Position numbers and translations under genes: made by a program
Origin: Macrostomum lignano
Lineage: Eukaryota
Reading direction: 5' to 3'
DNA length: 64,000 bases
Assembly: GCA_002269645.1 (NCBI GenBank)
Contig: NIVC01002524.1
Span: 62,001-126,000 of the forward strand
The notes under the pieces: model-generated
What the model saw: the letters and a program-made list of their open reading frames with translations, nothing else
Told to the model about the DNA's origin: nothing
Database searches by the model: none
Shown: piece after piece, positions 46,301-64,000 of the stretch
How positions within the stretch are numbered: position 1 is the first letter of the stretch
How the letters are laid out: every line of letters starts with the position of its first letter

Positions 46301-47145
46301 AAGCCATGGCCTATCTTGAATCATTTGCCTGTGGGGCATAAAATAAACAAATTCTCAACTCAAAGAAAGCTCTGAGACCCTTTACAGGTCATTACTAGTG
46401 GCAGCAACTACCCTACTGAAAAGTAACCAGCTCAGCAAATTGACACATTAATTTATGGCATCAGCAATCTTTGGTGTTTCAATATTTGAACAACTGTGCC
46501 GCTCTACAACCACTCCGCTACAATTACGACTACCCCCCCTTGGACTTGAGAACCCGGCTGTCAGAGTAAAAGGATAAGAAATTTGTTGTGATTTGTTTAC
46601 ACAATTTTATGGCTTCATTTGTGCGAATGCAACGCTAACCAGTTTCGAGGAAACCCCAATCCCAATTTTCAAACCAAATCATTTATTTTCTTTCTCCACC
46701 CCCACCTCAAAATACTTAGACCTATTCTAAGAAATATTCTCAGACTTATTCTAAGATAAATAAACTCATAATTTATTAATAGAATATAAGCTTGGTGACA
46801 GTAAGTAAGATTAACAAAATAATAATTAAGAGCCCTGTTACAACTATAGGGAACAGCAGTGGGATAATTTTAGTAAAATGAAACATACCTGTAACAACTT
46901 TGGTGTCAGCAGTTGAGATTTCCATAGAGAGCCAAAGGGCCTATAATATTATTGTTAGAAATAAAATATTCTATAGAATATATCATTCTTGGATTAGATA
47001 CAAAACTTATAAAGAAAGCCATGAAGATAGCAAATTCCTGTATGCCAATAACAATGGTATGCACAAAAGACAAAACATTTAAAAGATAATGCAAAGCATT
47101 TCTTCAAGACAAATATGGCATTGGTAAGCCCTAACTCAAAATGAA

Positions 47146-47594
47146 GGCAGTGCTTATCTCCACGGTACTATAGGAATAATTTCTGTCTTATTCCAACAGT
47201 ACCGTGGGAATAATTTTCTGCTTATCCGCACGGCACACTGACGAGATAGCTGGCCCATCTTCTATATATGCTGTGGGAATATTAATTTAGTACTTACGGT
47301 TTAAGTGTAGTATAACAAAATAACTAAATAGGCCTAGAAGTAAAGATTTAATGGCTTTTTTATGAAAAAAACGCTGGTTGTGGTGTTGATCTAGATCAAC
47401 AGCTTCTTAGTATCCTCAATTTAAATTCCCTTTCAAAAAGCTATAAACTATTCACATACAGCATATATATATAGAAAGAAGATATGGCAGCTATCTCGTC
47501 AATGTGCCGTGCAGATAAGCAGAAAATTATTTGTTGGAATTCGTGGGAATAAGACAGAAATTATTCCTACGGTACTGTGGGGATAAGCACTGCC
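47146..47594. mobile_element. 449-bp non-autonomous DNA transposon (MITE) with TIRs of about 130 bp and a 9-bp TSD (Mutator/Merlin-like)
   Basis: Ends are GGCAGTGCTTATC...GATAAGCACTGCC; arms at about 47146-47275 and 47458-47594 are imperfect reverse complements; CAAAATGAA is duplicated at 47137-47145 and 47595-47603. Confidence 0.88.
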
Positions 47595-48415
47595 CAAAAT
47601 GAAATGCAATGATAGGCCTATTGTTTTTGGTTCCAACCAAAGGTCTAAAAATTTCTGCCACATAAACATATTTATAAAAAGATTATCTCATATAGTGTTT
47701 TCATTGAAAGTACAATTCTATAGTTTATAAAATATTGCCTTTTATATTTACAATGGGGTTCAAAATGTTTGTCATTCAGCCATTTTAAAAACTTGATTTT
47801 CAAAGCACTGTGTAAAGACAAAAGTGCTTATAATATGGAATATATAGGGTATGCTCATATAGTGTTTTCTTTCCATGCCTTTTAAAGTTTATTTTTGCAC
47901 AAAGCCTGAGCACCTCTCTGGATTTTTAGCAAAATGGATAAGAAGAAGTACTGAGCACTCAACACATTTTTTCACCTTGAAAAGGCTAAAAAAATCAATA
48001 GCGATTGAAAAGAAGGAGAGTGTTTAAGCATTAAGTAAATTAATAACTAATATGTAGGTAAAATGCTAAATAAACTTAAGATCATATTAACATCGACTGT
48101 AAATATAAAATATTTTTAACATTTGCCACTGATTCTGCCAACGTTGTGAACTAAGACGAAGTTAAAAATGAATACTCATTAAACTTAAATTTGCGGTAAA
48201 AAGCAGCGATAAAACAATTTTTTGTTAGGTAAAATCTAAATTTCAATACACATCAATGAATATCATTTGCTGTATTGTTTGTAACAGCAATAAAACTTTA
48301 AACTTTTAAAATTTTAATTAATTTTTTTACATTTTAAGAATGCAAAACGACGTAAGTTTACTCTGCTACCGCTTTCATGCCTTTCAACCTCAGTGTGCAC
48401 TCTGTCGGGTCCATG

Positions 48416-48493
48416 AGAATTGCCCGCAGACGAATTGCCCGCAGACGAATTGCCCGCCGAGATATGCCCGCAGGAGATTTTCCCGCCGAGATT
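48416..48493. repeat. Short array of about 16 bp (GAATTGCCCGCAGAC-like), about 5 units
   Basis: Visible tandem copies; may be the subterminal repeat of a decayed element. Confidence 0.6.
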
Positions 48494-49084
48494 AAAATTT
48501 TAAAATTAAGGCAAAAAAGAACTGCTATAGGATTTCTTTCCTGTGTATTTTATTAATTATCTTCAGAAATTCCCATCACGATATCTGTAAATCAAATTAT
48601 ATAGAGTGATAGTGTCGTTTACTATCCGCAACTTAGAGTTCATTACATCTTTAACAACCAATTGGCGCAATATAAATTTCAACTCCTGATTTTCGAGACT
48701 ACATGTACTTGTAGAATTGTACTTTTGTCATATACATGTACATGTACTTGTACTTGGATTCAATTTATTGAATTGAATAAATTGGGCTATACATTGTCAC
48801 CAATTTACACGTAGCTATAATTTTTTTCTTCTGAAATGCTATAAAGCGAAGTTTTCGAATACTTTTCTCAAATACCTTAAATATTATAATTAGCTCTGCC
48901 GAATAAGTCGCTGATCAAAGCACTGCACTTGGAGCTACATATTCTGGCAAATGAAAAGGCATCCTTACTTACTGGTTAGTATGTACAGTAAGTGCGAGAA
49001 TGCACGCGATTTTGGTGCAAAAAAACACAGAACTGCAATTACGCCTCTTAGAAATAATGAAACTATACCGGTATTCTGCAAGTT

Positions 49085-50521
49085 CTAGAGCTCGGACTTA
49101 ACGCCCTCAAACTTGTTGGGCCGTTTCTCGGCGTGGAATTTCTCAGCTGCGCGAACAAACGCGCGCACCTCCGAGTTCATTAAGTCGGGCAGTTCGAAAG
49201 CGGCAAAGTGACCGCCGTGGTCGAAATCAGCGTAGTGCAACAAGTTCGGATTGGTGACCCGGACGAAGCGCTCAGGAACACGGGAGAGCTCGTGGGCCAG
49301 GCAAGTCACTCCATACGGCACATCGGATGGCATTGATTGATAAGCTGAGGTAGCTTCCATGTCGCTGCCGAACGACTCCTTGTAAAGCCGCATGGACGAA
49401 GTGATGCTGCCAGTTGTCCAATAGATCATTACATTAGTCAGAAGCTCGTCCAGGCTGAATGTCGCCTTCAAGCCGACTAGGTTGCCATTTTCGGCAAAAA
49501 GATTCCCTGGCAAAGTCCACACGCTGAACTTTTCAATGATGTAGGCAGCCAGGCCCACTGGTGAGTCTGACAGGGCGTGGCCCACTGAGTCCGGCCGAGT
49601 CGAGTGTAGATGCATGTGCCCCGACTCTCGAATCGTGTTGCCGAACTTCTCCAGGTAGGGGAAGAGCTTGCCACAGTCCAGCCTGTTGAACAGGACACCT
49701 TCTGGCAGGAATGATCCCAGAATCGTCTGGATCATTATCGACGGCTGACGAACTGGCTGAGCAGGCATATTTGTATGAAAGCCGAGCACTCGCTCCGGAA
49801 ACAATCGAGGCATCACGTGACCGATGACGCTGCCGAAATCACCGGCTTGGATGTAATACTGGCGATACCCGAGCCTGACCATCAGCTTGTCGAACACTCG
49901 AGCACAGGCAGCGGCACTGAAGCCTCGCTTCTTCGCCGCTTCGGACCACCCGTATCCCGGAATCGAGGGAGCTACAACTTCGAACGCCAACCCGTCCGTA
50001 TCTGGAGTCGTCAGCAGTGGAATCAGCTTGTAAAACTCGAACACTGACCCGGGCCAACCGTGCAAAATCAACAGAGGCACTCGCTTCTTCACCCCCTTCT
50101 TCGACGGTTTCAGGTGCATAAAGTGCACTTTTAGTCCTTCGATCCGAGTGAAATAGTTCGGAAAACTGTTCAGGCGATCCTCCCAGACTCGCCAGTTGTA
50201 TTTGTTGAGCCAGTGAGACACCAGCTGCTTCATGAAGGCGCCGTTGAAGCCGTACTCGAAGCCGGAGTTCTCGACCGGCTCCACAAACTTGAACGCTTTC
50301 AAGCGCGACCTCAAATCGTCGAGTGTTGCATTGCTGACAGACAGTCTTGTGGCTTCCACCGCTTCGCCGTCGCTGCTTGAGTCGCTCGAGGCACCCCAGT
50401 TGAGCGTGGCTGGCAGGGCCGGCTTATCCGGAGCTGCGAGATTGTCCAGGCAGCCGAGGCCCGCAAGAAGCACGAATGCCAGACAGGCAGTGCAGGCCAG
50501 TGGGAGCAGAGTGTTGCACAT
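49085..50521 (-). CDS. EPHX1: Microsomal epoxide hydrolase (EPHX1/JHEH family), copy A, 478 aa, intronless
   Basis: N-terminal signal-anchor; HGWPGSVFEF oxyanion motif; nucleophile GDFG; DSPVGLAAYIIEKF; acid HEL; GGHFAAFE catalytic His. Confidence 0.95.
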   Translation of the reverse strand: MCNTLLPLACTACLAFVLLAGLGCLDNLAAPDKPALPATLNWGASSDSSSDGEAVEATRLSVSNATLDDLRSRLKAFKFVEPVENSGFEYGFNGAFMKQLVSHWLNKYNWRVWEDRLNSFPNYFTRIEGLKVHFMHLKPSKKGVKKRVPLLILHGWPGSVFEFYKLIPLLTTPDTDGLAFEVVAPSIPGYGWSEAAKKRGFSAAACARVFDKLMVRLGYRQYYIQAGDFGSVIGHVMPRLFPERVLGFHTNMPAQPVRQPSIMIQTILGSFLPEGVLFNRLDCGKLFPYLEKFGNTIRESGHMHLHSTRPDSVGHALSDSPVGLAAYIIEKFSVWTLPGNLFAENGNLVGLKATFSLDELLTNVMIYWTTGSITSSMRLYKESFGSDMEATSAYQSMPSDVPYGVTCLAHELSRVPERFVRVTNPNLLHYADFDHGGHFAAFELPDLMNSEVRAFVRAAEKFHAEKRPNKFEGVKSEL

Positions 50522-52006
50522 TTTTACTCCAATGTCTCCAAAAGCGTTTCTCTGACTGAGGTTTTAAATGTAAGATTTTCGTATACAGCCTTCGTTCGTG
50601 CATTTGCAACAAACCCCCTCAACACAATTACGAGTACGAGGGTGCAGGCATGAAATTGGGGTGGGCAGATTGCCTTAGTCTGGATAGTACTGTACTTTGC
50701 TCTAGTTGTCGGCTTGTGCAGTCTAGCCTTCTATCCTTTCCTGTTCCTATTTTACAGGGGTTTTGGGAACGTGCGAGTACTGTTTAAACTCATGCTTAAA
50801 GCCAACTATCTGCCTCTTGTACGTGCGACTATCCACTGCCCAAGGCCCATGCCCAAGTTACTGTGTGCCAATAGTAGTGCTTTCGTTCAATCGAGTAAAA
50901 CATCAGGATGCACTTAGCAATTGCGCAAAACTTCATTGCATTTAGAGTCGCGGCGCATTGAGTTTTTGTGTCGTTTTTTCGTGTACTTTCTGAAACACAC
51001 ACATCACAATACGTCGTATATTATTGTGCAGTGAAGTAACACCGGTGCTATTTTACAAGTATACGTAAATAAAGGAGTAAGAAGAAATTGCAGGGTGAGT
51101 ACACTTCTAGCGCACACAATAACTGTAAGATAGTACAGTGAGATAGCCAACCAAAAAGTAAAGCTCGGGCCAAGTTGAGCTGTTATCTATCACTAAACAG
51201 AAAACTCTACTCACAAAAAGCAACACGCCCTATTTTAATCAGCCAAAACAGCGATTGAAGAAAGAGTTAAACAGAAAATCTTCCATCAAAAACCTCAGTC
51301 AGAGAAACGCTTTTGGAGACATTGGAGTAAAAATGTGCAACACTCTGCTCCCACTGGCCTGCACTGCCTGTCTGGCATTCGTGCTTCTTGCGGGCCTCGG
51401 CTGCCTGGACAATCTCGCAGCTCCGGATAAGCCGGCCCTGCCAGCCACGCTCAACTGGGGTGCCTCGAGCGACTCAAGCAGCGACGGCGAAGCGGTGGAA
51501 GCCACAAGACTGTCTGTCAGCAATGCAACACTCGACGATTTGAGGTCGCGCTTGAAAGCGTTCAAGTTTGTGGAGCCGGTCGAGAACTCCGGCTTCGAGT
51601 ACGGCTTCAACGGCGCCTTCATGAAGCAGCTGGTGTCTCACTGGCTCAACAAATACAACTGGCGAGTCTGGGAGGATCGCCTGAACAGTTTTCCGAACTA
51701 TTTCACTCGGATCGAAGGACTAAAAGTGCACTTTATGCACCTGAAACCGTCGAAGAAGGGGGTGAAGAAGCGAGTGCCTCTGTTGATTTTGCACGGTTGG
51801 CCCGGGTCAGTGTTCGAGTTTTACAAGCTGATTCCACTGCTGACGACTCCAGATACGGACGGGTTGGCGTTCGAAGTTGTAGCTCCCTCGATTCCGGGAT
51901 ACGGGTGGTCCGAAGCGGCGAAGAAGCGAGGCTTCAGTGCCGCTGCCTGTGCTCGAGTGTTCGACAAGCTGATGGTCAGGCTCGGGTATCGCCAGTATTA
52001 CATCCA
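49848..52006. repeat. 718-bp inverted repeat arms (49848-50565 and 51289-52006) around a 723-bp spacer
   Basis: Arms compared by eye appear identical; they cover 44 nt upstream of the ATG plus codons 1-225 of both EPHX copies. Confidence 0.9.
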
Positions 52007-52763
52007 GGGTGGCGACTGGGGAGCCGGCATTGGTCACATAATAACAAGAGAGTTTCCGGAGCGAGTGCTCGGCTTCCATACCAATATGCCGATGCAGCCA
52101 TTCCGACAGCCATCAGTGATCGTACAGATGATCGCCGGATCGTTCATACCTGACGGTATCCTGTTTAGCAAGAAGGACGGACAAAAAATATTTCCCTACT
52201 TTGAAAAGCTGAGCGACATCATCCGTGAGAGCGGGTACATGCACATTCAAGCCACTCGGCCGGACACCATCGGGCACGCCTTGTCGGACTCGCCAGTGGG
52301 TTTGGCTGCCTACATTCTTGAGAAGTTTAGCGTTTGGACAGATCCGCAAAATAGGCTTTCCCAGACTGGCAACCTTATCGGCCCGAAGGCGGCCTTCAGC
52401 CTGGACGAGCTGCTGACCAATGTAATGATCTACTGGACCACTGGCAGCATCACTTCGTCCGTGCGGCTGTACAAGGAAGTTTTTAGTGAGAATAGGGAAA
52501 CTACGATGGCCTACTTCTCCATCCCGTCAGATGTTCCGCACGGAGTCGCAAGCTTCTCTAACGAGCTTTCTCGGGTGCCCGAACGCATCGTACGAGTTAC
52601 CCATCCCAACCTGCTACACTACGCTGACTTCGATCACGGCGGTCACTTTGCCGCTTTTGAACTGCCCGACTTGATGAACTCAGAGGTGCGCGCGTTCGTT
52701 CGCGCAGCTGAGGACTTCCACGCCAAGAAACGGTCGCCACTGGGTGAAGGCAAAGAGCTTTGA
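51333..52763 (+). CDS. EPHX1: Microsomal epoxide hydrolase (EPHX1/JHEH family), copy B, 476 aa, intronless
   Basis: Same motifs as copy A, with canonical GGDWG and ESGYMHIQ. Start placed at ATG 51333 by symmetry with copy A, not at the TTG at 51255. Confidence 0.95.
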   Translation: MCNTLLPLACTACLAFVLLAGLGCLDNLAAPDKPALPATLNWGASSDSSSDGEAVEATRLSVSNATLDDLRSRLKAFKFVEPVENSGFEYGFNGAFMKQLVSHWLNKYNWRVWEDRLNSFPNYFTRIEGLKVHFMHLKPSKKGVKKRVPLLILHGWPGSVFEFYKLIPLLTTPDTDGLAFEVVAPSIPGYGWSEAAKKRGFSAAACARVFDKLMVRLGYRQYYIQGGDWGAGIGHIITREFPERVLGFHTNMPMQPFRQPSVIVQMIAGSFIPDGILFSKKDGQKIFPYFEKLSDIIRESGYMHIQATRPDTIGHALSDSPVGLAAYILEKFSVWTDPQNRLSQTGNLIGPKAAFSLDELLTNVMIYWTTGSITSSVRLYKEVFSENRETTMAYFSIPSDVPHGVASFSNELSRVPERIVRVTHPNLLHYADFDHGGHFAAFELPDLMNSEVRAFVRAAEDFHAKKRSPLGEGKEL

Positions 52764-53741
52764 AAGAAATACCTACACTGATTTACATGTAACTGATAGA
52801 CTTCGAAAGTGACATTAGGTCATTTATATTTCTATACAAACTAACGGTTTCAATTAGCTCGCTCGTATTAAGATTGGTATTCTTAACCAGTTTCCTCACA
52901 ATTAGTCCGTTAAACAAAATTTCATAATATATATCAAAGTCTGGACCTCCACCTATCACTTCAATCCTTTACATTATTTTATTGATTTTCGCTAAAGTCA
53001 CCATGCCTAGAATGAATGTCGAGGAATTTTTTGAATAATTTATTTCTGAAGTTACTTCTATAATGAGTAACAAATATTTATTCGATTGATTTGTTGTGAT
53101 AATCAAATTTGGAAAAGAAAGCAGTAAAGAAAAATGAAAATCGTACATTTTTACAAAATATTCGAATCAGAAACAGAATCTGAGTTAAACATACCAAGTA
53201 AATTTATACGCTTGGATAGGAAGTACGTCATAGCTAAATGAAGGTCAGAGATGAGAAGGTTTGATAAGGGTTGAAAAGTGGTTAAACAAAAAACACATGC
53301 AAGTTTTGCCATCTTATCTAGCAGTACTGTAAATCATGCATACGCTCGTATCTTTCTCTGAGAGCTTCTTTTCTGTTTGAACATCCCGACAATATATTAC
53401 TACCGAAACCCTTGAAGCCATCGTTGTCAGTTGTCCAAATGTCTGCGAATAAACATGGCATGCGCTTATTTAGAGGCTTATTATATGCGATGTTACCAGT
53501 GTCAAGGAACGCATGGTTACAAGAAGTCCCAATGAAATAATGGTGCAATAAGGGAAACGAAGTATTATTTGGTCAATGATTAAATAAACCAGAGAAAGAA
53601 GTTTTAACGTTAATGCAACAAAACAAAAAACCTAAAGCAGCCGAGCTACATTTTAGTAAATCCCTGTAGGCCGCAGCGAGGGTCTGGGGCCTTTTGCGTC
53701 TGCCAGGAGGATCGTCAGCGCGTCCAACAGCTCTTCTCGGC

Positions 53742-56700
53742 TCAGCCGGTTCGCAGAGGAGCTGGATGTCCTAGTGCGCTAGCCTCGTGACCAACATCCT
53801 CGCCCACCATTAGGCCTAAGCGGGTCCTGTCGTTGCGCAATCCGATAGCCTGGTTGATTAGGTAGTGCACCAACACATCCGGATCGAACAGGTCCATCTT
53901 GACCCGCACCGGGCTGCTCGGTGCCCAACGGCCGAGGCCGGTGACGAGAAGTTCGCGCAATACGTCCAAAATGTTGAGCGGTGGTGATAGGGCTGAGTAG
54001 TTCTCGTACTCGTTGACGAAGGCGAACCTCTCGAACTGCCACAGAGCTCGACTGTTACTATCGATCTCGTCAATTGTCTTGGAAAAGAGCGCAACAATGA
54101 GGCTTAAAAGCAAAATGGTGGTGATGATTATGTAAATCGGTAGCAGGATGTAGGGCACGACGAATACAGCATCCGGGTGCGGACAGTTGAGGCTTGTGTT
54201 TTGGCGAGCTTCAAACACCTGGGCGCATTCGCTTCCAGTCATCTGGTCTAGGTGGTACTCGCCAAACATACTGTAGAAGCAAATATGCAGCACATGCCTG
54301 ATGACTTCAGACATGCTGAGTTGGTTTGGGTTGTAGGCAAAGAAACCGTTCGGATGCATTAAAGACGTCATGAAGATGCCAAATCCAAACAGATAGATGA
54401 ATAGGATGTATAGAAATGGCAGCAGGTCTTTGATGATCATAGTAGACATCATGGTGAGCTTCGGGCCAAAGTAGGCATTCACGCGTGCAATGTTGAGCAG
54501 CTTCACCCACATGAGAAGACAGGCCAGCCCGTAAAAGAAACGGGCACAGAACCATACATGATTCTCAAATAGTTCGGTAAACGTCTCCGGGGTCTCCTCC
54601 CGCAAGGCCATTGTAAGACGAAGGATGAAGGCGGTAATCATGAAGAGGCATGCAAAGCCGTCAACTATGTTCCATTTGTTTGAACCATACTCGTGGAAGC
54701 TGTCGTGCCAAAGCGACAGACCGAGCTCTCGCAGCTCCTCGATGATGAAGCCTAACGCGATTATGTAAGCACAAACCTCCAGTGGTGAAATTGTCCAGTT
54801 GAAGTCAATCAACACAGTGTAGGACATAATTAGAATCAGCGTCACGTGACTCATTGTAAAGTAGCGAAACTTAACACTCGGGATGTGGTAGAAGCAGTAC
54901 AGCAGGCCGATGAATATTTGTAGCTTCGCTTTCACAGACTTCCTCGAGCCAAATATTCGCTCTCCGCTAAAGTCGTTGTCAAACATGGTCGTCGCCGGTC
55001 CCGTATCTTCATGCAAGGCGAAGCTCTCGTTGCTTCCCATGCTGCCCTGAATGGTTGCATCATTCTGCTTCTGCTTCTGTTTCAGCTGCGGCTGCTGTTG
55101 TTCAACCCGTGAAGAAGCGCGGCCACCGTCATAAGCGTACAAGAGAATCGCCAAGAGAGGATTCATTGGGATGATGCCCATGATGACTGCGAATTCCCGC
55201 AGCCAAGGGTTCATATTGCAAAGAAAGCGCTGCCAGGTGATGTCCATGGCCTTCTGACAGACGTCCAAACGAAGAAAGGAGTCGCACTGACAGTTAGCCG
55301 CTAGATGAATGCAGCTCAAATTTCCGAATTCCGGCATGCTCTGCAATAGGTATTGGTAGGTCACCCACTTGTCCTCACTCATATCAACTTGAACTGCCTT
55401 GGTGAGTGCATCACAGGCAACGCGTTCACACTGGTCGGCAAGGTCAGTAACGGCAGGCAGCTGCAAGGCATCAATTTCCAAGACAGTGTTGAGCTTCCTA
55501 AGAATTCCGGCGGACAAAACGCAAAGAGGAACGATTTCGAACTGCGTCTTTCGCAGGAAAGCAAGGGTCAGATTGAACCTGCCAGTAAGAATGCTCCAAA
55601 CAGCTAGCGTCTCGACTGGATTGTTTATTTGCAGCGTATCTTTTCCAGACTCTCGAACGTCATCACCGGCTGATGGGGGGCTCATGCCAATGCATATGGC
55701 CACCCGCTGGTTGAGCTTGCGAAGATTAAATGCCTGCCGCTTTCCTCCTATCGTACCTGTGCCCGAATCCATAAAACAGGTGTAAAACTGCTTGCTTATA
55801 ATGCTGGCATCCCTGTTGGTGTTGTTATAAAGAGTAGAAATGTGGTCTTCAAGAAACCCGCTCACTCTGTCCCAGAGAACGCCACATTTCATTACATCAT
55901 TAAGTGCAGAAATATCCTCACGAAACAGGATGTACTTGGTTGTGAAGATTGCAATTGTGTCGATGATCTCACGATTTTCCGAGTATCTGTGAATCGCGTT
56001 GGTCTTCAGGGCAGCCATCAGAATAGTTTGGAACTCGATCACATCCTGTAGGTTCTCCTCATCAAGATCCAGCAACTCGTCGACTAGCTTCATCTCTTCA
56101 GCTGGGTCTCCGACTGTGTTGTAGTAGCAACGACGGCTCTCCGAGTCGATGAGCTGCAGCAAGCACAGGAATTCCTGAAAGCCGCGGCTCCTGTAGAGAT
56201 CCTGCGGCTTGGTCACCTTAGTGTCAGAAGACACGCGATCGGTAAAATGGCGAATCAGCTCGCGCAGCGTGCCGCGATTCTTGTTGCTCATCATGACGTC
56301 GATTGCGGTACGGCCGTCCGTAGTTTCCCGATCGACTGTAGCACCATGGTCTAGCAGCAGCTTCATTAGCGTAATGTTCTGATTGGCAACTGCAATGTGC
56401 AATGGCGTCTTGCCGTCAGCATCCTGAGCATTTATGAGTTCTGGCGCTGCTCCCAGCACGAGACCTGCGTGTTCTTGTAGGTCGTTTATGCAGGCTCGGT
56501 GCAGTGGTGTCAGCTGGGCCTGATCAACCAGGCTGGCATCGGCGCCGTGGCTTAATAGTAGCTCAAGGAGCACAGTGGAGCTGTCAGAGCACGCTTTGTG
56601 CAGCAAATAGTCCCCGGTGGGTAGTGCAACGTTTGGATTGGCGCCCTGCTCGAGTAGGAAGGCCACTGTTCCGGCCACATCGGGTCCTGATAGCGCATAG

Positions 56701-57146
56701 TGTATCGGTATGAAGCCGGCCGTGTTGGGTCGATTAATCTCAGCCCCTTGATCTAGGGCAATCTCTAGCAGTTTGATCTTGCTTAGAGCAGCTGCAACGT
56801 CGCTTAGACGCATGGCTTCATGCAGTTCCAAGTCGATTACCTTGGGATTGGCAAAACGTTTCAATGCCTCGATGTCATCGTCCATGATAGCTTGATACAG
56901 CAGTTCGGCTATGTTAGGTTGGGTCTCTACAGGTTGGATCACGGCATCGGAGTCCGCCCTCTCAGTTTCTGGCTCCCTGTCGTCTGCTTCTGGCCTGTCT
57001 TCCGTCACCTGGGGCGCGGTGGAATCGCGACGCTTTGTGGTTAGTCGGGTGCCGAACAATCGCAGGTTGCCGAAGCCCAACTTTTTATTCGTCTTCTTTT
57101 TCGAGCCGAAGAAGCCCTTGTCCTGAGACTCCGGTGGCGACGACAT
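53742..57146 (-). CDS. TRPM-like cation channel with N-terminal ankyrin repeats, 1134 aa, intronless
   Basis: Ankyrin repeats (TPLHRAC, GKTPLHIAV...LLLDHGA); MHR4-like LAVWSIL...FGNLSCIHLA...CQKAMDITW; pre-S1 FYHIPSVKF; six TM segments; pore FYSMFGEY; TRP box LWQFERF...EY...LSPPLN. Confidence 0.9.
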   Translation of the reverse strand: MSSPPESQDKGFFGSKKKTNKKLGFGNLRLFGTRLTTKRRDSTAPQVTEDRPEADDREPETERADSDAVIQPVETQPNIAELLYQAIMDDDIEALKRFANPKVIDLELHEAMRLSDVAAALSKIKLLEIALDQGAEINRPNTAGFIPIHYALSGPDVAGTVAFLLEQGANPNVALPTGDYLLHKACSDSSTVLLELLLSHGADASLVDQAQLTPLHRACINDLQEHAGLVLGAAPELINAQDADGKTPLHIAVANQNITLMKLLLDHGATVDRETTDGRTAIDVMMSNKNRGTLRELIRHFTDRVSSDTKVTKPQDLYRSRGFQEFLCLLQLIDSESRRCYYNTVGDPAEEMKLVDELLDLDEENLQDVIEFQTILMAALKTNAIHRYSENREIIDTIAIFTTKYILFREDISALNDVMKCGVLWDRVSGFLEDHISTLYNNTNRDASIISKQFYTCFMDSGTGTIGGKRQAFNLRKLNQRVAICIGMSPPSAGDDVRESGKDTLQINNPVETLAVWSILTGRFNLTLAFLRKTQFEIVPLCVLSAGILRKLNTVLEIDALQLPAVTDLADQCERVACDALTKAVQVDMSEDKWVTYQYLLQSMPEFGNLSCIHLAANCQCDSFLRLDVCQKAMDITWQRFLCNMNPWLREFAVIMGIIPMNPLLAILLYAYDGGRASSRVEQQQPQLKQKQKQNDATIQGSMGSNESFALHEDTGPATTMFDNDFSGERIFGSRKSVKAKLQIFIGLLYCFYHIPSVKFRYFTMSHVTLILIMSYTVLIDFNWTISPLEVCAYIIALGFIIEELRELGLSLWHDSFHEYGSNKWNIVDGFACLFMITAFILRLTMALREETPETFTELFENHVWFCARFFYGLACLLMWVKLLNIARVNAYFGPKLTMMSTMIIKDLLPFLYILFIYLFGFGIFMTSLMHPNGFFAYNPNQLSMSEVIRHVLHICFYSMFGEYHLDQMTGSECAQVFEARQNTSLNCPHPDAVFVVPYILLPIYIIITTILLLSLIVALFSKTIDEIDSNSRALWQFERFAFVNEYENYSALSPPLNILDVLRELLVTGLGRWAPSSPVRVKMDLFDPDVLVHYLINQAIGLRNDRTRLGLMVGEDVGHEASALGHPAPLRTG

Positions 57147-60362: not shown

Positions 60363-62980
60363 CTAGGGCTCGGTCTCGCTCAGATCAGCAGCATGGCGCC
60401 ACCAAACTGTGTTGACAAACTGTGTTCGATCTGCAGTGGAAGATTGATAGCAGCACGCACTCCTATTCTAATCTTATACTGTATCGCACTGACTTCCACT
60501 CGCTCTCTTGGCAATTAGGTAACTTTCGGCACCTTTCGGTTTTGGCTTTCGGGAGCGCTAATCTAATTTCCGAACAAGGAACACTAGTAGAGCATGTTTC
60601 TGCTTGCCGAATTGTTCGGGTAAAGGCACGAGAGATTTTGTATTTCTGCTTTGCCGTTAGTTTTTAGCAAACATAATCCAGAAATAAGAGCTATCTATTG
60701 ATAAAGTTACCTTTGCATTTGCTTGCAAATATTTCTTGCTTATTTTTTCGGTAACACAAATAAAGGGTACACACATGTAGAGCAGTGCAAGGGTAACTAG
60801 ATGTGTTCAAGGGTGTCTAGATGACTGCAATGGTGTCTAAATGAGTGCAAGAGTATCAGATGAGTGCGAGGGCATCTAGATGAGTGCAAGGGTATCTAGG
60901 TGAGTGCGAGGGTATCTAGATGAGTGCAAGGGTATCTAGGTGAGTGCGAGGGCATCTAGATGAGTGAAAGACTATCTGTAGATGAGTGAAAGAGTATCTA
61001 GATGAGTGAAAGAATATCTAGATAAGTGCAAGGGGATCTAGGTGAGTGCGAGGGTATCTAGATAAGTGCAAGGGGATCTAGGTGAGTGCGAGGGTATCTA
61101 GATGAGTGCAAGGGTATCTAGATGAGTGCAAGGGTGTCTAGATGAGTGCAAGGGTATCTAGATGAGTGAAAGAGTATCTAGATGAGTGAAAGAGTATCTA
61201 GATGAGTGAAAGAGTATCTAGATGAGTGAAAGAGTATCTAGATGAGTGCAAGGGTATCTAGATGAGTGAAAGAGTGTCTAGATGAGTGCAAGGGAATCTA
61301 GGTGAGTGCGAGGGTATCTAGATGAGTGCGAGGGTATCTAGATGAGTGCGAGGGTATCTAGATGACTGCAATGGTGTCTAAATGAGTGCAAGAGTATCAG
61401 ATGAGTGCGAGGGCATCTAGATGAGTGCAAGGGGATCTAGATGAGTGCAAGGGGATCTAGATGAGTGAAAGAGTATCTAGATGAGTGAAAGAATATCTAG
61501 ATAAGTGTAAGGGGATCTAGGTGAGTGCGAGGGTATCTAGATGAGTGCAAGGGTATCTAGATGAGTGCAAGGGTATCTAGGTGAGTGCGAGGGCATCTAG
61601 ATGAGTGAAAGACTATCTGTAGATGAGTGAGAGTATCTAGATGAGTGCGAGGGTATCTAGATGAGTGCGAGGGTATCTAGATGAGTGCGAGGGGATCTAG
61701 ATGAGTGAAAGAGTATCTAGATGAGTGAAAGAATATCTAGATAAGTGCAAGGGGATCTAGGTGAGTGCGAGGGTATCTAGATGAGTGCAAGGGTATCTAG
61801 ATGAGTGCAAGGGTATCTAGGTGAGTGCGAGGGCATCTAGATGAGTGAAAGACTATCTGTAGATGAGTGAGAGTATCTAGATGAGTGCGAGGGTATCTAG
61901 ATGAGTGCAAGGGGATCTAGATGAGTGAAAGAGTATCTAGATGGGTGAAAGAATATCTAGATAAGTGCAAGGGGATCTAGGTGAGTGCGAGGGTATCTAG
62001 ATGAGTGCAAGGGTATCTAGATGAGTGCAAGGGTATCTAGGTGAGTGCGAGGGCATCTAGATGAGTGAAAGACTATCTGTAGATGAGTGAGAGTATCTAG
62101 ATGAGTGCGAGGGTATCTAGATGAGTGCAAGGGGATCTAGATGAGTGAAAGAGTATCTAGATGAGTGAAAGAATATCTAGATAAGTGCAAGGGGATCTAG
62201 GTGAGTGCGAGGGTATCTAGATGAGTGCAAGGGTATCTAGATGAGTGCAAGGGTATCTAGATGAGTGCAAGGGTATCTAGATGAGTGCAAGGGTATCTAG
62301 ATGAGTGCAAGGGGATCTAGATGAGTGCAAGGGTATCTAGATGAATGCAAGGGTGTCTAGATGAGTTCAAGGGTGTCTAGATGAATGCAAGGGTGTCTAG
62401 ATGAGTGCAAGGGTATCTAGATGAGTGCAAGGGTATCTAGATGAGTGCAAGCAAGGGTATTATTAGTCGAGGCTTCTTTACCTTGAAACTTTGCGCCCTT
62501 CAGGGTAAACGCAATGCTGGAGTCCGTCCCACTTGGTTGAAGATGGCAAGCAAGATCCCATTTTGGAGTGACGTATGCTTAGGTTAGATCGATGGTTAGA
62601 ATGTCACAGTTGCTCAACTCGCCTATGAAGCCAATTCAGACAATTCAATTGATTAGCGGTCACTGGGATTGCAGATAAGCGGCATTGGATTTTCTGCTGT
62701 CACAAAAATATCAATCAGTCTCCACTGGAGATGAGGAAATATGGAAATTTTTAGTCAGGGTCACAAAATTTGCCTAGAAATTCATTAACGAAATTGATTT
62801 TTTTTCAACTTTATTTTATAGTTGGCATAAATTACAGTGGGTGAAGTTTTACCCGAAACAACCTCCGCGTGGCAATTAGCCAATTTGACTTAATCCAGTT
62901 AGAAATTTACGCTGAATGGATAGAGAGAGCTGCAGCTCTGCTAGAATCAGAGGCAGGGCGAAGCCGCAACCCCAGATCGG
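60363..62980 (-). CDS. 3' exons of an unidentified gene entering from beyond the window; complement(join(60363..60430,62482..62577,62911..62980))
   Basis: Three exons with GT-AG borders and matching phases (0/1, 1/1, 1/stop) give PIWGCGFALPLILAELQLSLSIQPYVTPKWDLACHLQPSGTDSSIAFTLKGAKFQDRTQFVNTVWWRHAADLSETEP*. No family recognised. Confidence 0.5.
60780..62460. repeat. 20-bp minisatellite (GATGAGTGCAAGGGTATCTA) with block duplications of 220-240 bp
   Basis: About 80 units; the marker variant GACTATCTGTA recurs periodically. Confidence 0.95.
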
Positions 62981-62995
62981 CTGGAAAAAGTGATG

Positions 62996-64000
62996 GCGCC
63001 CCTTGCAGTAGCTTTGGCGCATATGGAACTGACGACCGTTGCAGTAGCTTTGGCGCTTATGGAACTGCAACGACCGTTGCAGTAGCTTTGGCGCATATGG
63101 AACTGACGACCGTTGCAGTAGCTTTGGCGCTTATGGAACTGGCTCCCCTTGTAGTAGCTTTGGCGCATATGGAACTGGCGCCCCTTGCAGTAGCTTTGGC
63201 GCTTATGGAACTGGCGCCCCTTGCAGTAGCTTTGGCGCTTATGGAACTGACGACCGTTGCAGTAGCTTTGGCGCTTATGGAACTGACGACCGTTGCAGTA
63301 GCTTTGGCGCATATGGAACTGACGACCGTTGCAGTAGCTTTGGCGCATATGGAACTGACGACCGTTGCAGTAGCTTTGGCGCATATGGAACTGACGACCG
63401 TTGCAGTAGCTTTGGCGCTTATGGAACTGGCTCCCCTTGTAGTAGCTTTGGCGCATATGGAACTGGCGCCCCTTGCAGTAGCTTTGGCGCTTATGGAACT
63501 GGCGCCCCTTGCAGTAGCTTTGGCGCTTATGGAACTGGCTCCCCTTGTAGTAGCTTTGGCGCTTATGGAACTGGCGCCCCTTGCAGTAGCTTTGGCGCAT
63601 ATGGAACTGACGACCGTTGCAGTAGCTTTGGCGCATATGGAACTGACGACCGTTGCAGTAGCTTTGGCGCATATGGAACTGACGACCGTTGCAGTAGCTT
63701 TGGCGCATATGGAACTGACGACCGTTGCAGTAGCTTTGGCGCCTATTGAAAATGGCTCCCCTTGTAGTAGCTTTGGCGCATATGGAACTGGCTCCCCTTG
63801 CAGTAGCTTTGGCGCTTATGGAACTGGCGCCCCTTGCAGTAGCTTTGGCGCTTATGGAACTGGCTCCCCTTGTAGTAGCTTTGGCGCTTATGGAACTGGC
63901 GCCCCTTGCAGTAGCTTTGGCGCATATGGAACTGACGACCGTTGCAGTAGCTTTGGCGCTTATGGAACTGGCGCCCCTTGTAGTAGCTTTGGCGCATATG
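62996..64000. repeat. 36-bp minisatellite (GCAGTAGCTTTGGCGCATATGGAACTGACGACCGTT), runs off the window end
   Basis: About 28 units; abuts the minus-strand acceptor at 62981. Confidence 0.95.

What the first reader, a model, noticed from the sequence alone, without database searches (positions are those of the whole stretch)
49085..52763. Head-to-head epoxide hydrolase pair with a 718-bp identical palindromic tract ending at the nucleophile motif
Seen: the two copies appear identical from 44 nt upstream of the ATG through codon 225 (...YYIQ). They then diverge abruptly (AGDFGSVIG vs GGDWGAGIG), with many synonymous and non-synonymous differences across the cap/lid region, and become similar again near the catalytic His. 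The 723-bp spacer is unique. Inference: this is an old duplication whose 5' halves are homogenised by arm-to-arm gene conversion while the substrate-determining half is kept divergent. The arms could also form a cruciform or fold-back RNA.
Basis: partly seen in the sequence, partly recalled or inferred. Interest (0 to 1): 0.7.

Follow-up and report, generated by a model that had tools for sequence, protein, structure and literature searches.

The report
Flatworm epoxide hydrolase pair, half-homogenised
Two old, back-to-back copies of a detoxifying enzyme gene in the flatworm Macrostomum lignano keep their first halves letter-for-letter identical by copying from each other, while their catalytic halves stay very different; this is a clean but ordinary example of partial gene conversion.

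Summary
Two intronless microsomal-type epoxide hydrolase genes lie head to head: A at 49085-50521 (-) and B at 51333-52763 (+). They are 100% identical over 718 nt, from -44 to codon 225. Identity then drops at once to 72.5% (dS about 1.07 against 0.006). A unique 723-bp spacer separates the arms.

The window is Macrostomum lignano contig NIVC01002524.1. Two other contigs of the same assembly carry the same locus, matching the three subgenomes described for this neopolyploid. All three have the palindrome and the same 3' boundary. In one of them, three substitutions relative to the window occur in both arms. So arm-to-arm gene conversion continued after the subgenomes separated, and an assembly artefact is unlikely.

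The 3' halves are too diverged to recombine now: the longest identical run is 24 nt. The boundary therefore sustains itself, and selection to keep them apart is possible but not shown. Copy A has replaced four residues invariant in 114 relatives (G226A, W229F, lid Tyr302His, Q306H). It keeps the Asp/Glu/His triad and is under purifying selection, so it probably has an altered function.

Cruciform or fold-back RNA roles are unsupported: the two mRNAs share the same sense sequence. This is a new example of a known process, of moderate interest.

The parts
49085..50521 (-). Copy A: intronless 478-aa microsomal-type epoxide hydrolase with a derived active site (AGDFGS, lid His302)
   Evidence: ORF. 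Pfam EHN 1.4e-30 and Abhydrolase_1 1.3e-17. Residues.
51333..52763 (+). Copy B: intronless 476-aa microsomal-type epoxide hydrolase with the canonical active site (GGDWGA, lid Tyr302)
   Evidence: ORF and ATG. Pfam match. Best solved relative is Bombyx JHEH 4QLA, E 4.5e-104. Exact product found on NIVC01002524.1.
49848..50565 (-). Left arm of the perfect inverted repeat: 44 nt of 5' leader plus codons 1-225 of A
   Evidence: Exact reverse complement of 51289-52006.
51289..52006 (+). Right arm of the perfect inverted repeat: 44 nt of 5' leader plus codons 1-225 of B
   Evidence: The same boundary is present in two homeologous contigs.
50566..51288 (.). Unique 723-bp spacer between the divergent genes, presumably holding both promoters. 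Its outer 15 nt on each side (50566-50580 and 51274-51288) are still homologous, with 3 mismatches.
49085..49847 (-). Unconverted 3' half of A (codons 226-478): nucleophile elbow, cap, acid and His
   Evidence: 72.5% nt identity to B, dS about 1.07. pN/pS 0.23 between homeologs.
52007..52763 (+). Unconverted 3' half of B (codons 226-476)
49829..49846 (-). Nucleophile motif of A, AGDFGS (Asp228 kept; Gly226Ala, Trp229Phe)
52008..52025 (+). Nucleophile motif of B, GGDWGA
49616..49618 (-). Codon 302 of A: His in place of the lid Tyr that is invariant in 114 of 114 relatives. B has Tyr at 52236-52238.

Best explanation
This is an ancient inverted duplication of an intronless microsomal epoxide hydrolase (EPHX1/JHEH-type) gene in Macrostomum lignano.

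Shown: the 5' 0.72 kb of the two copies is kept identical by recurrent intrachromosomal, non-reciprocal repair, in which one arm is copied onto the other (arm-to-arm gene conversion). This stretch holds the leader, the membrane anchor, the EHN domain and the hydrolase core up to the nucleophile elbow. Conversion has continued since the three subgenomes of this neopolyploid separated.

Inferred: conversion tracts are bounded upstream by the end of homology, at about -59 to -44. Downstream they are bounded at +674, where identity collapses (12 mismatches in 30 nt, no identical run longer than 24 nt afterwards), so heteroduplex cannot extend. The step probably began as one copying event that ended there, or as an early escape of the 3' half. 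It may be reinforced by selection, because copy A has a remodelled catalytic pocket that conversion would erase.

The result is two enzymes with one shared N-terminal half and two different catalytic and cap modules.
For: The 718 nt are exactly identical, and dS steps from 0.006 to 1.07.

The same pair with the same 3' boundary is present on three contigs of GCA_002269645.1: NIVC01002524.1 (the window), NIVC01002444.1 (L001, 97.5% identical) and NIVC01000240.1 (L003, 99.5% identical). This matches the three homeologous subgenomes reported for this assembly, where 3-copy blocks make up 69.6% of its length and the SNP rate is about 2.2% (PMC10733133).

The L001 arms differ from the window arms at offsets 209, 269 and 423. 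Both L001 arms carry the same new base at each site, and only one difference (-36) is unpaired. In the arms the six sequences therefore group by locus, whereas in the 3' halves they group by gene type.

In L001 the B arm carries the A-type bases at -46/-45, so the upstream tract end differs between homeologs. This implies separate events.

Proteins predicted from the other assembly of this line (ML2) show both the A-type and the B-type 3' halves joined to the same N-terminal half, including 10 codons upstream of the ATG (P0002, P0206).

Both copies are under constraint: dN/dS is 0.18 between A and B, and pN/pS is 0.23 between A homeologs.
Against: No raw reads were examined, and both assemblies use the same PacBio data set. 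Sequence-level confirmation therefore does not rest on independent data.

No orthologous pair from another Macrostomum species was found in the protein collection. Long-term concerted evolution cannot be separated from a fairly recent founding event followed by maintenance.

Only three covarying sites carry the argument for conversion after the split.

GC3 is barely higher in the converted half (0.71 against 0.65), and an unlinked paralog is higher still. There is thus no GC-biased-conversion signature to add support.
Confidence: 0.85

Rival explanations
1. The boundary is held by selection (the Teshima-Innan type of model). Conversion would otherwise spread through the whole gene, but tracts that carry one copy's nucleophile, cap or lid residues into the other are removed, because A and B have different functions.
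For: The step sits exactly at the nucleophile motif. Copy A alone has changed residues invariant in 114 relatives (G226A, W229F, Y302H, Q306H) plus three that are at least 95% conserved. It still keeps an open frame in all three homeologs, with pN/pS 0.23. The model and its opsin example are described in PMC3924837.
Against: Divergence is a saturated plateau over all 757 nt, not a peak around a few sites. At 72.5% identity, with runs of 24 nt or less, conversion is mechanically improbable whatever selection does. Overall amino-acid change is not faster on the A lineage (20 against 14, p = 0.39), and the excess of hits on conserved sites is not significant (7/19 against 1/14, p = 0.10).
Confidence: 0.35
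2. There was a single recent replacement and no ongoing process. One copying event overwrote the 5' half of one diverged paralog with the other, and the arms have simply not had time to diverge.
For: A sharp step with a flat saturated plateau beyond it is what one event with one endpoint would leave.
Against: The event would have to predate the split of the three homeologs, since all three share the boundary. Yet three of the four later substitutions in L001 are present in both arms. Independent parallel hits at three sites have a probability of roughly 1e-8. The upstream tract end also differs between homeologs.
Confidence: 0.08
3. The identity is an assembly or polishing artefact. It was created by read correction, consensus calling or Pilon polishing of repeated sequence, or by a chimeric fold-back read.
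For: The assembly is Canu on PacBio CLR reads, polished with Pilon using multi-mapping Illumina and RNA-seq reads. The genome is triplicated and repeat-rich.
Against: A fold-back chimera has no unique 723-bp spacer, and its arms would not continue as 72%-identical genes. Three contigs independently show the structure, with locus-specific variants shared by both arms. Mixing of reads among all six arms would not produce that pattern. Reads several kb long span the whole 3.7-kb structure. A different assembler gave gene models with the same shared half.
Confidence: 0.03
4. The palindrome is functional as a nucleic-acid structure: a cruciform, or a fold-back RNA that feeds small-RNA pathways.
For: A perfect 718-nt inverted repeat would pair if it were ever single-stranded or transcribed as one unit (sequence).
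Against: The arms are ordinary coding sequence under protein-level constraint. Transcription is divergent, so the two mRNAs are identical in sense and not complementary. The 723-bp spacer disfavours extrusion (general knowledge). Nothing in the data calls for such a role.
Confidence: 0.03

Closest known systems
Gene-conversion-maintained palindromes of primate Y and X chromosomes (P1-P8; PMC3723533, PMC8981503, PMC3403216)
   Same: Inverted arms flank a unique spacer. Near-perfect arm identity is maintained by recurrent arm-to-arm conversion. The conversion is shown in the same way, by variants shared between arms within a lineage but differing between lineages.
   Different: Those arms are 9 kb to 1.45 Mb long, hold whole (often testis-expressed) genes and lie on sex chromosomes. 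Here the arm is 0.72 kb, ends in the middle of a coding sequence and lies in a flatworm with no sex chromosomes. No GC-bias signal was seen.
Partial concerted evolution of duplicated genes with a divergent segment (human red/green opsins; Teshima and Innan 2008, reviewed in PMC3924837)
   Same: Old duplicates are homogenised over part of their length, and the functionally distinguishing residues lie in the unhomogenised part.
   Different: The opsins are tandem and show a local peak of divergence around two sites. Here the copies are inverted, and the whole 3' half is a saturated plateau beginning at a single-nucleotide step. Selection was not demonstrated.
Inverted Hsp70Aa/Ab pair of Drosophila and other ectopic conversion among Drosophila and Caenorhabditis paralogs (own knowledge; reviews PMC3924832, PMC3966223)
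   Same: Closely spaced, divergently oriented paralogs are homogenised by conversion.
   Different: In those cases the whole coding region is usually homogenised. Here only the 5' 47% is.
Microsomal epoxide hydrolase EPHX1 and insect juvenile hormone epoxide hydrolase (4QLA)
   Same: EHN domain plus alpha/beta-hydrolase fold, HGWP motif, Asp/Glu/His triad, N-terminal hydrophobic anchor. Copy B keeps every invariant residue.
   Different: Copy A has His in place of the first epoxide-polarising Tyr, Phe in place of the Trp next to the nucleophile, and His in place of an invariant Gln. The genes are intronless.

Membership tests
Microsomal epoxide hydrolase family (EPHX1/JHEH) | N-terminal EHN domain followed by an alpha/beta-hydrolase fold | tested here: met
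   Pfam PF06441 at 1.3-1.4e-30 and PF00561 at 1e-17 to 1e-19 in both copies. 4QLA at E 4.5e-104.
Microsomal epoxide hydrolase family (EPHX1/JHEH) | Catalytic triad Asp/Glu/His (human Asp226, Glu404, His431; PMC8331186) and the HGWP oxyanion motif | tested here: met
   H154-G-W-P, D228, E411 and H438 are present in A and B in all intact homeologs. They occupy columns that are 109-113 of 114 conserved.
Microsomal epoxide hydrolase family (EPHX1/JHEH) | Two epoxide-polarising tyrosines (human Tyr299, Tyr374) | tested here: inconclusive
   Copy B has Y302 and Y380 (met). Copy A has H302 and Y380, so the first Tyr, invariant in 114 of 114 relatives, is not met. A belongs to the family by descent but may not be a canonical epoxide hydrolase.
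Microsomal epoxide hydrolase family (EPHX1/JHEH) | Epoxide-hydrolysing activity | not testable with these tools
   Needs an enzyme assay.
Conversion-maintained palindrome | Inverted arms with more than 99% identity around a unique spacer | tested here: met
   718/718 in the window and in L003, 717/718 in L001. Unique 723-bp spacer.
Conversion-maintained palindrome | Arms evolve in concert: substitutions are shared by both arms within a lineage and differ between lineages | tested here: met
   Offsets 209, 269 and 423 read G,C,A in both arms of the window and L003, and A,T,C in both arms of L001.
Conversion-maintained palindrome | Structure confirmed by reads or clones spanning both arms | not testable with these tools
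   Only assemblies are available: three contigs, plus gene models from a second assembler on the same PacBio data.
Massive ampliconic sex-chromosome palindromes (Y/X type) | Arms of tens of kb to Mb that contain whole genes | tested here: not met
   The arm is 0.72 kb and ends inside the coding sequence. It works like these palindromes but is not one of them.
Selection-limited gene conversion (neofunctionalisation under conversion pressure) | Divergence is maintained by selection and not by loss of homology | tested here: inconclusive
   A has active-site changes. But divergence is a plateau, and the longest identical run is 24 nt. The relative-rate test gives p = 0.39 and the conserved-site excess p = 0.10.

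The most novel reading that the evidence does not exclude
The step at the nucleophile elbow is enforced by selection. On this reading the flatworm keeps one shared, conversion-proofread N-terminal half (anchor, EHN domain, oxyanion half of the core) for two enzymes whose catalytic and cap modules have different chemistries. Copy A (Tyr302His, Trp229Phe, Gln306His) would be a neofunctionalised hydrolase that no longer uses the canonical two-tyrosine epoxide clamp.
Probability: 0.3. Interest if true: 0.55.

Novelty: new member of a known kind. Interest (0 to 1): 0.33.

Why it matters
For evolution: this is an unusually clean, internally replicated case of domain-level concerted evolution, with three homeologs in one genome. 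The same protein is half homogenised and half free to diverge, and the break falls at the catalytic nucleophile. That makes it a convenient system for asking whether homology loss or selection sets conversion boundaries.

For enzymology: copy A is a natural variant of the microsomal epoxide hydrolase pocket. It lacks one of the two tyrosines treated as essential support for catalysis, yet it is conserved.

For users of the M. lignano model: any probe, dsRNA, guide RNA or short read from the first 675 nt of the coding sequence hits both paralogs in all three subgenomes. Only the 3' halves tell them apart. The current annotation truncates copy A to 346 aa on two contigs.

Tried and rejected
Orthologs of the A-type half in other species. 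A second database search with residues 226-478 of A found only M. lignano sequences above 65% identity. The one Logan transcript, P0003 (SRR28338165), groups with the unlinked paralog P0004 and not with A or B. The age of the homogenisation could therefore not be dated across species.

Donor direction for the founding event. The outgroup paralogs are equally distant from the shared half (0.67-0.69) and give no polarity. Only the L001 upstream edge suggests A-to-B copying.

GC-biased conversion. GC3 is 0.71 against 0.65, and an unlinked paralog has 0.88 in the same region, so there is no signal.

Older conversion patches inside the 3' half. Low-difference stretches (offsets 1064-1123 and 1304-1393) coincide with invariant peptide motifs and still carry synonymous differences, so they were not pursued.

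A head-to-head arrangement as an older family trait. The third paralog (P0004, NIVC01000598.1) stands alone.

The bacterial promoter and terminator scanner was not used, because the organism is an animal. Structure prediction was not run, because the tools return no coordinates from which to measure the pocket.
Full report
**What is there**

The region holds two uninterrupted reading frames in divergent, head-to-head orientation. Copy A is at 49085-50521 on the minus strand (478 aa). Copy B runs from the ATG at 51333 to 52763 on the plus strand (476 aa). Both match the Pfam domains EHN (E about 1e-30) and Abhydrolase_1. The best solved relative is the Bombyx mori juvenile hormone epoxide hydrolase 4QLA (E 4.5e-104). 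They are therefore microsomal-type (EPHX1/JHEH) epoxide hydrolases.

**Check of the observation**

- The reverse complement of 49848-50565 is letter for letter the same as 51289-52006 (718 nt). This covers 44 nt before each ATG through the second base of codon 225.
- The next base differs (CAA/CAG). The motifs that follow are AGDFGS in A and GGDWGA in B.
- There are 12 differences in the first 30 nt after the boundary, and 208 of 757 over the rest of the gene.
- Nei-Gojobori estimates are dS 0.006 and dN 0 for codons 1-225, against dS 1.07 and dN 0.20 for codons 226 to the end.
- Chance cannot give this. The probability is about 1e-100 from overall divergence, or about 1e-59 from synonymous sites alone.
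- The spacer 50566-51288 is 723 bp. It is unique in the window and has no internal inverted repeat.
- Homology with three mismatches continues 15 nt further upstream, to -59, and then stops.
Codons 426-450 have no amino-acid difference but pS 0.52, which is purifying selection and not conversion.

**Origin of the window and replicate loci**

Copy B is found exactly on contig NIVC01002524.1 of Macrostomum lignano assembly GCA_002269645.1 (Mlig_3_7). L002 equals window 41333-62763.

Two further contigs of the same assembly carry the same locus with the same neighbours (V-ATPase E, ribosomal protein S26e, the pair, and an ankyrin/TRPM-like channel):

- NIVC01002444.1 (L001), 97.5% identical over 4.9 kb.
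- NIVC01000240.1 (L003), 99.5% identical over 9.2 kb.

This is what is published for this neopolyploid. About 70% of Mlig_3_7 is present in three paralogous copies, interpreted as three subgenomes (S, L1, L2), with about 2.2% SNP divergence (PMC10733133).

**The key test**

I aligned the six gene copies, A and B from each of the three loci.

- All three loci have the palindrome, and the first A/B difference is at the same base (+674).
- In the 3' halves the sequences group by gene type. A against A differs at 1-19 of 757 sites and B against B at 2-7, while A against B differs at 208-218.
- In the arms the sequences group by locus. The four arms of the window and L003 are identical to one another.
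- Both L001 arms differ from those four at the same three sites with the same bases: offset 209 G>A, 269 C>T, and 423 A>C (Lys142Gln).
- Only one difference, -36 in the L001 B arm, is confined to one arm.

Variants that are shared by both arms of one locus but differ between loci are the standard signature of arm-to-arm gene conversion. At least one conversion must have happened after these loci separated. Three independent parallel hits would have a probability of roughly 1e-8.

The upstream tract end also differs between loci. In L001 the B arm carries the A-type bases at -46/-45, so identity runs to -59 there. This points to separate events and, at that edge, to A-to-B copying.

**Artefact?**

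Mlig_3_7 is a Canu assembly of PacBio reads polished with Pilon (PMC5730564), in a triplicated, repeat-rich genome, so caution is warranted. Several points argue against an artefact:

- A fold-back chimera would have no unique 723-bp spacer, and its arms would not continue as 72%-identical genes.
- Mixing of short reads among arms would blur all six arms together. It would not produce locus-specific variants shared by two arms.
- PacBio reads are far longer than the 3.7-kb structure.
- Gene models from the other assembly of this line (ML2) show both the A-type and the B-type 3' halves attached to the same N-terminal half, including ten codons upstream of the ATG (P0002, P0206).

The two assemblies share the same PacBio data, so this is independence of assembler and not of data. 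I could not inspect reads.

**Why the boundary is where it is**

The 3' halves are now 72.5% identical, with no identical run longer than 24 nt. The boundary is immediately followed by the densest cluster of mismatches. On general knowledge of the homology requirements of recombination, heteroduplex cannot extend into such sequence. Once the step exists, it maintains itself without selection.

The flat, saturated plateau of divergence is not the local peak expected when a few selected sites resist conversion (PMC3924837). It fits two other origins better:

- A founding copy event that ended at +674 in already diverged genes.
- An early escape of the entire 3' half.

Selection may still contribute. 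Relative to 114 homologs, copy A alone has replaced four invariant residues: Gly226Ala, Trp229Phe, Tyr302His and Gln306His. It has also replaced three residues that are at least 95% conserved (Leu329Ile, Ala406Thr, Phe408Leu). Copy B keeps all of them.

By spacing and motif, Tyr302 corresponds to human Tyr299, one of the two tyrosines that polarise the epoxide. Asp228, Glu411 and His438 correspond to the Asp226/Glu404/His431 triad and are kept in both copies.

Copy A is not decaying. Its frame is intact in all three homeologs, and pN/pS between homeologs is 0.23.

The statistical tests are not significant:

- Amino-acid changes on the A lineage against the B lineage, polarised with two outgroup paralogs: 20 against 14 (p = 0.39).
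- Changes hitting sites at least 90% conserved: 7 of 19 against 1 of 14 (p = 0.10).

I therefore treat selection on the boundary as plausible (about one in three) and not shown.

**Age**

The 3' halves have dS of about 1, while A homeologs have pS 0.06. The duplication is thus far older than the genome multiplication. The third family member in this genome (P0004, 65-69% identical) is unlinked and stands alone.

No ortholog of the pair from another species was in the protein collection. I could not tell whether homogenisation is ancient or began shortly before the subgenomes split.

**Structure-forming ideas**

The genes are transcribed away from each other. The two mRNAs therefore contain the same sense sequence and are not complementary. 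A hairpin RNA would need a single transcript across the whole unit. Nothing in the sequence calls for a cruciform role, and a 723-bp spacer disfavours extrusion. These ideas remain untested and unlikely.

**Comparison with known systems, and verdict**

The mechanism is the one known from sex-chromosome palindromes (PMC3723533, PMC8981503) and from converted inverted or tandem paralogs (PMC3924832, PMC3966223). Partial homogenisation is known from the opsins and similar cases (PMC3924837).

It is not a member of the class of massive ampliconic palindromes, because its arm is 0.72 kb and ends inside a coding sequence. It works like them.

It is a new, tidy example of a known kind, made more useful by three homeologous replicates and by the coincidence of the boundary with the catalytic nucleophile. 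Interest is moderate.

It is practically relevant for M. lignano users. The 5' 675 nt of the coding sequence cannot distinguish the paralogs, and the deposited annotation truncates copy A to 346 aa on two contigs.

Noticed in passing
window 47146-47594 (target duplications at 47137-47145 and 47595-47603): A 449-bp fold-back element with terminal inverted repeats (GGCAGTGCTTATC...) is flanked by a 9-bp direct duplication, CAAAATGAA. It is present in the window and in L003. L001 has the empty site with a single CAAAATGAA. It looks like a MITE insertion that is polymorphic between subgenomes.
   Followed up: partly
window 1-42600 and 60784-64000: More than 30 different minisatellite arrays (periods 10-56 nt, up to 83 copies) fill most of the non-genic sequence. 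Many long 'ORFs' in the window are just these arrays.
   Followed up: no
L003 (NIVC01000240.1), copy B, offsets 1003-1006 from the ATG: A 4-nt deletion shifts the frame and truncates copy B to 334 aa on this homeolog (deposited as PAA87245.1). It is either a real inactivation of one of three B copies or a PacBio indel error.
   Followed up: partly
window 48497-53388 compared with L001: Divergence between homeologs is very uneven. The A 3' flank is 5.0%, the A 3' half 2.5% (pS 0.061), the arms 0.4-0.6%, the spacer 1.4%, the B 3' half 0.26% (pS 0.006) and the B flank 1.9%. In the B 3' half the window is closer to L001 than to L003, the reverse of the pattern elsewhere. This suggests exchange between homeologs on the B side.
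   Followed up: partly
window 49085-50521, 51333-52763, 53742-57146; L005 10001-11248: All three epoxide hydrolase paralogs, and the neighbouring 1134-aa ankyrin/TRPM-like channel gene, are single uninterrupted ORFs. The species is reported to average about 4.9 introns per gene. Retrogene ancestry or intron loss is possible.
   Followed up: no
window 49085-50521 (-); L003 and L004 gene calls: The deposited gene model for copy A on two contigs is a 346-aa fragment that starts inside the ORF (HFMHLKPS...), although a complete 478-aa frame with an ATG is present. The L001 homeolog is annotated at full length (PAA57799.1).
   Followed up: yes
window 48415-48489: There are short 15-nt direct repeats (GAATTGCCCGCAGAC-like, 3-5 copies) in the 3' flank of copy A.
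   Followed up: no
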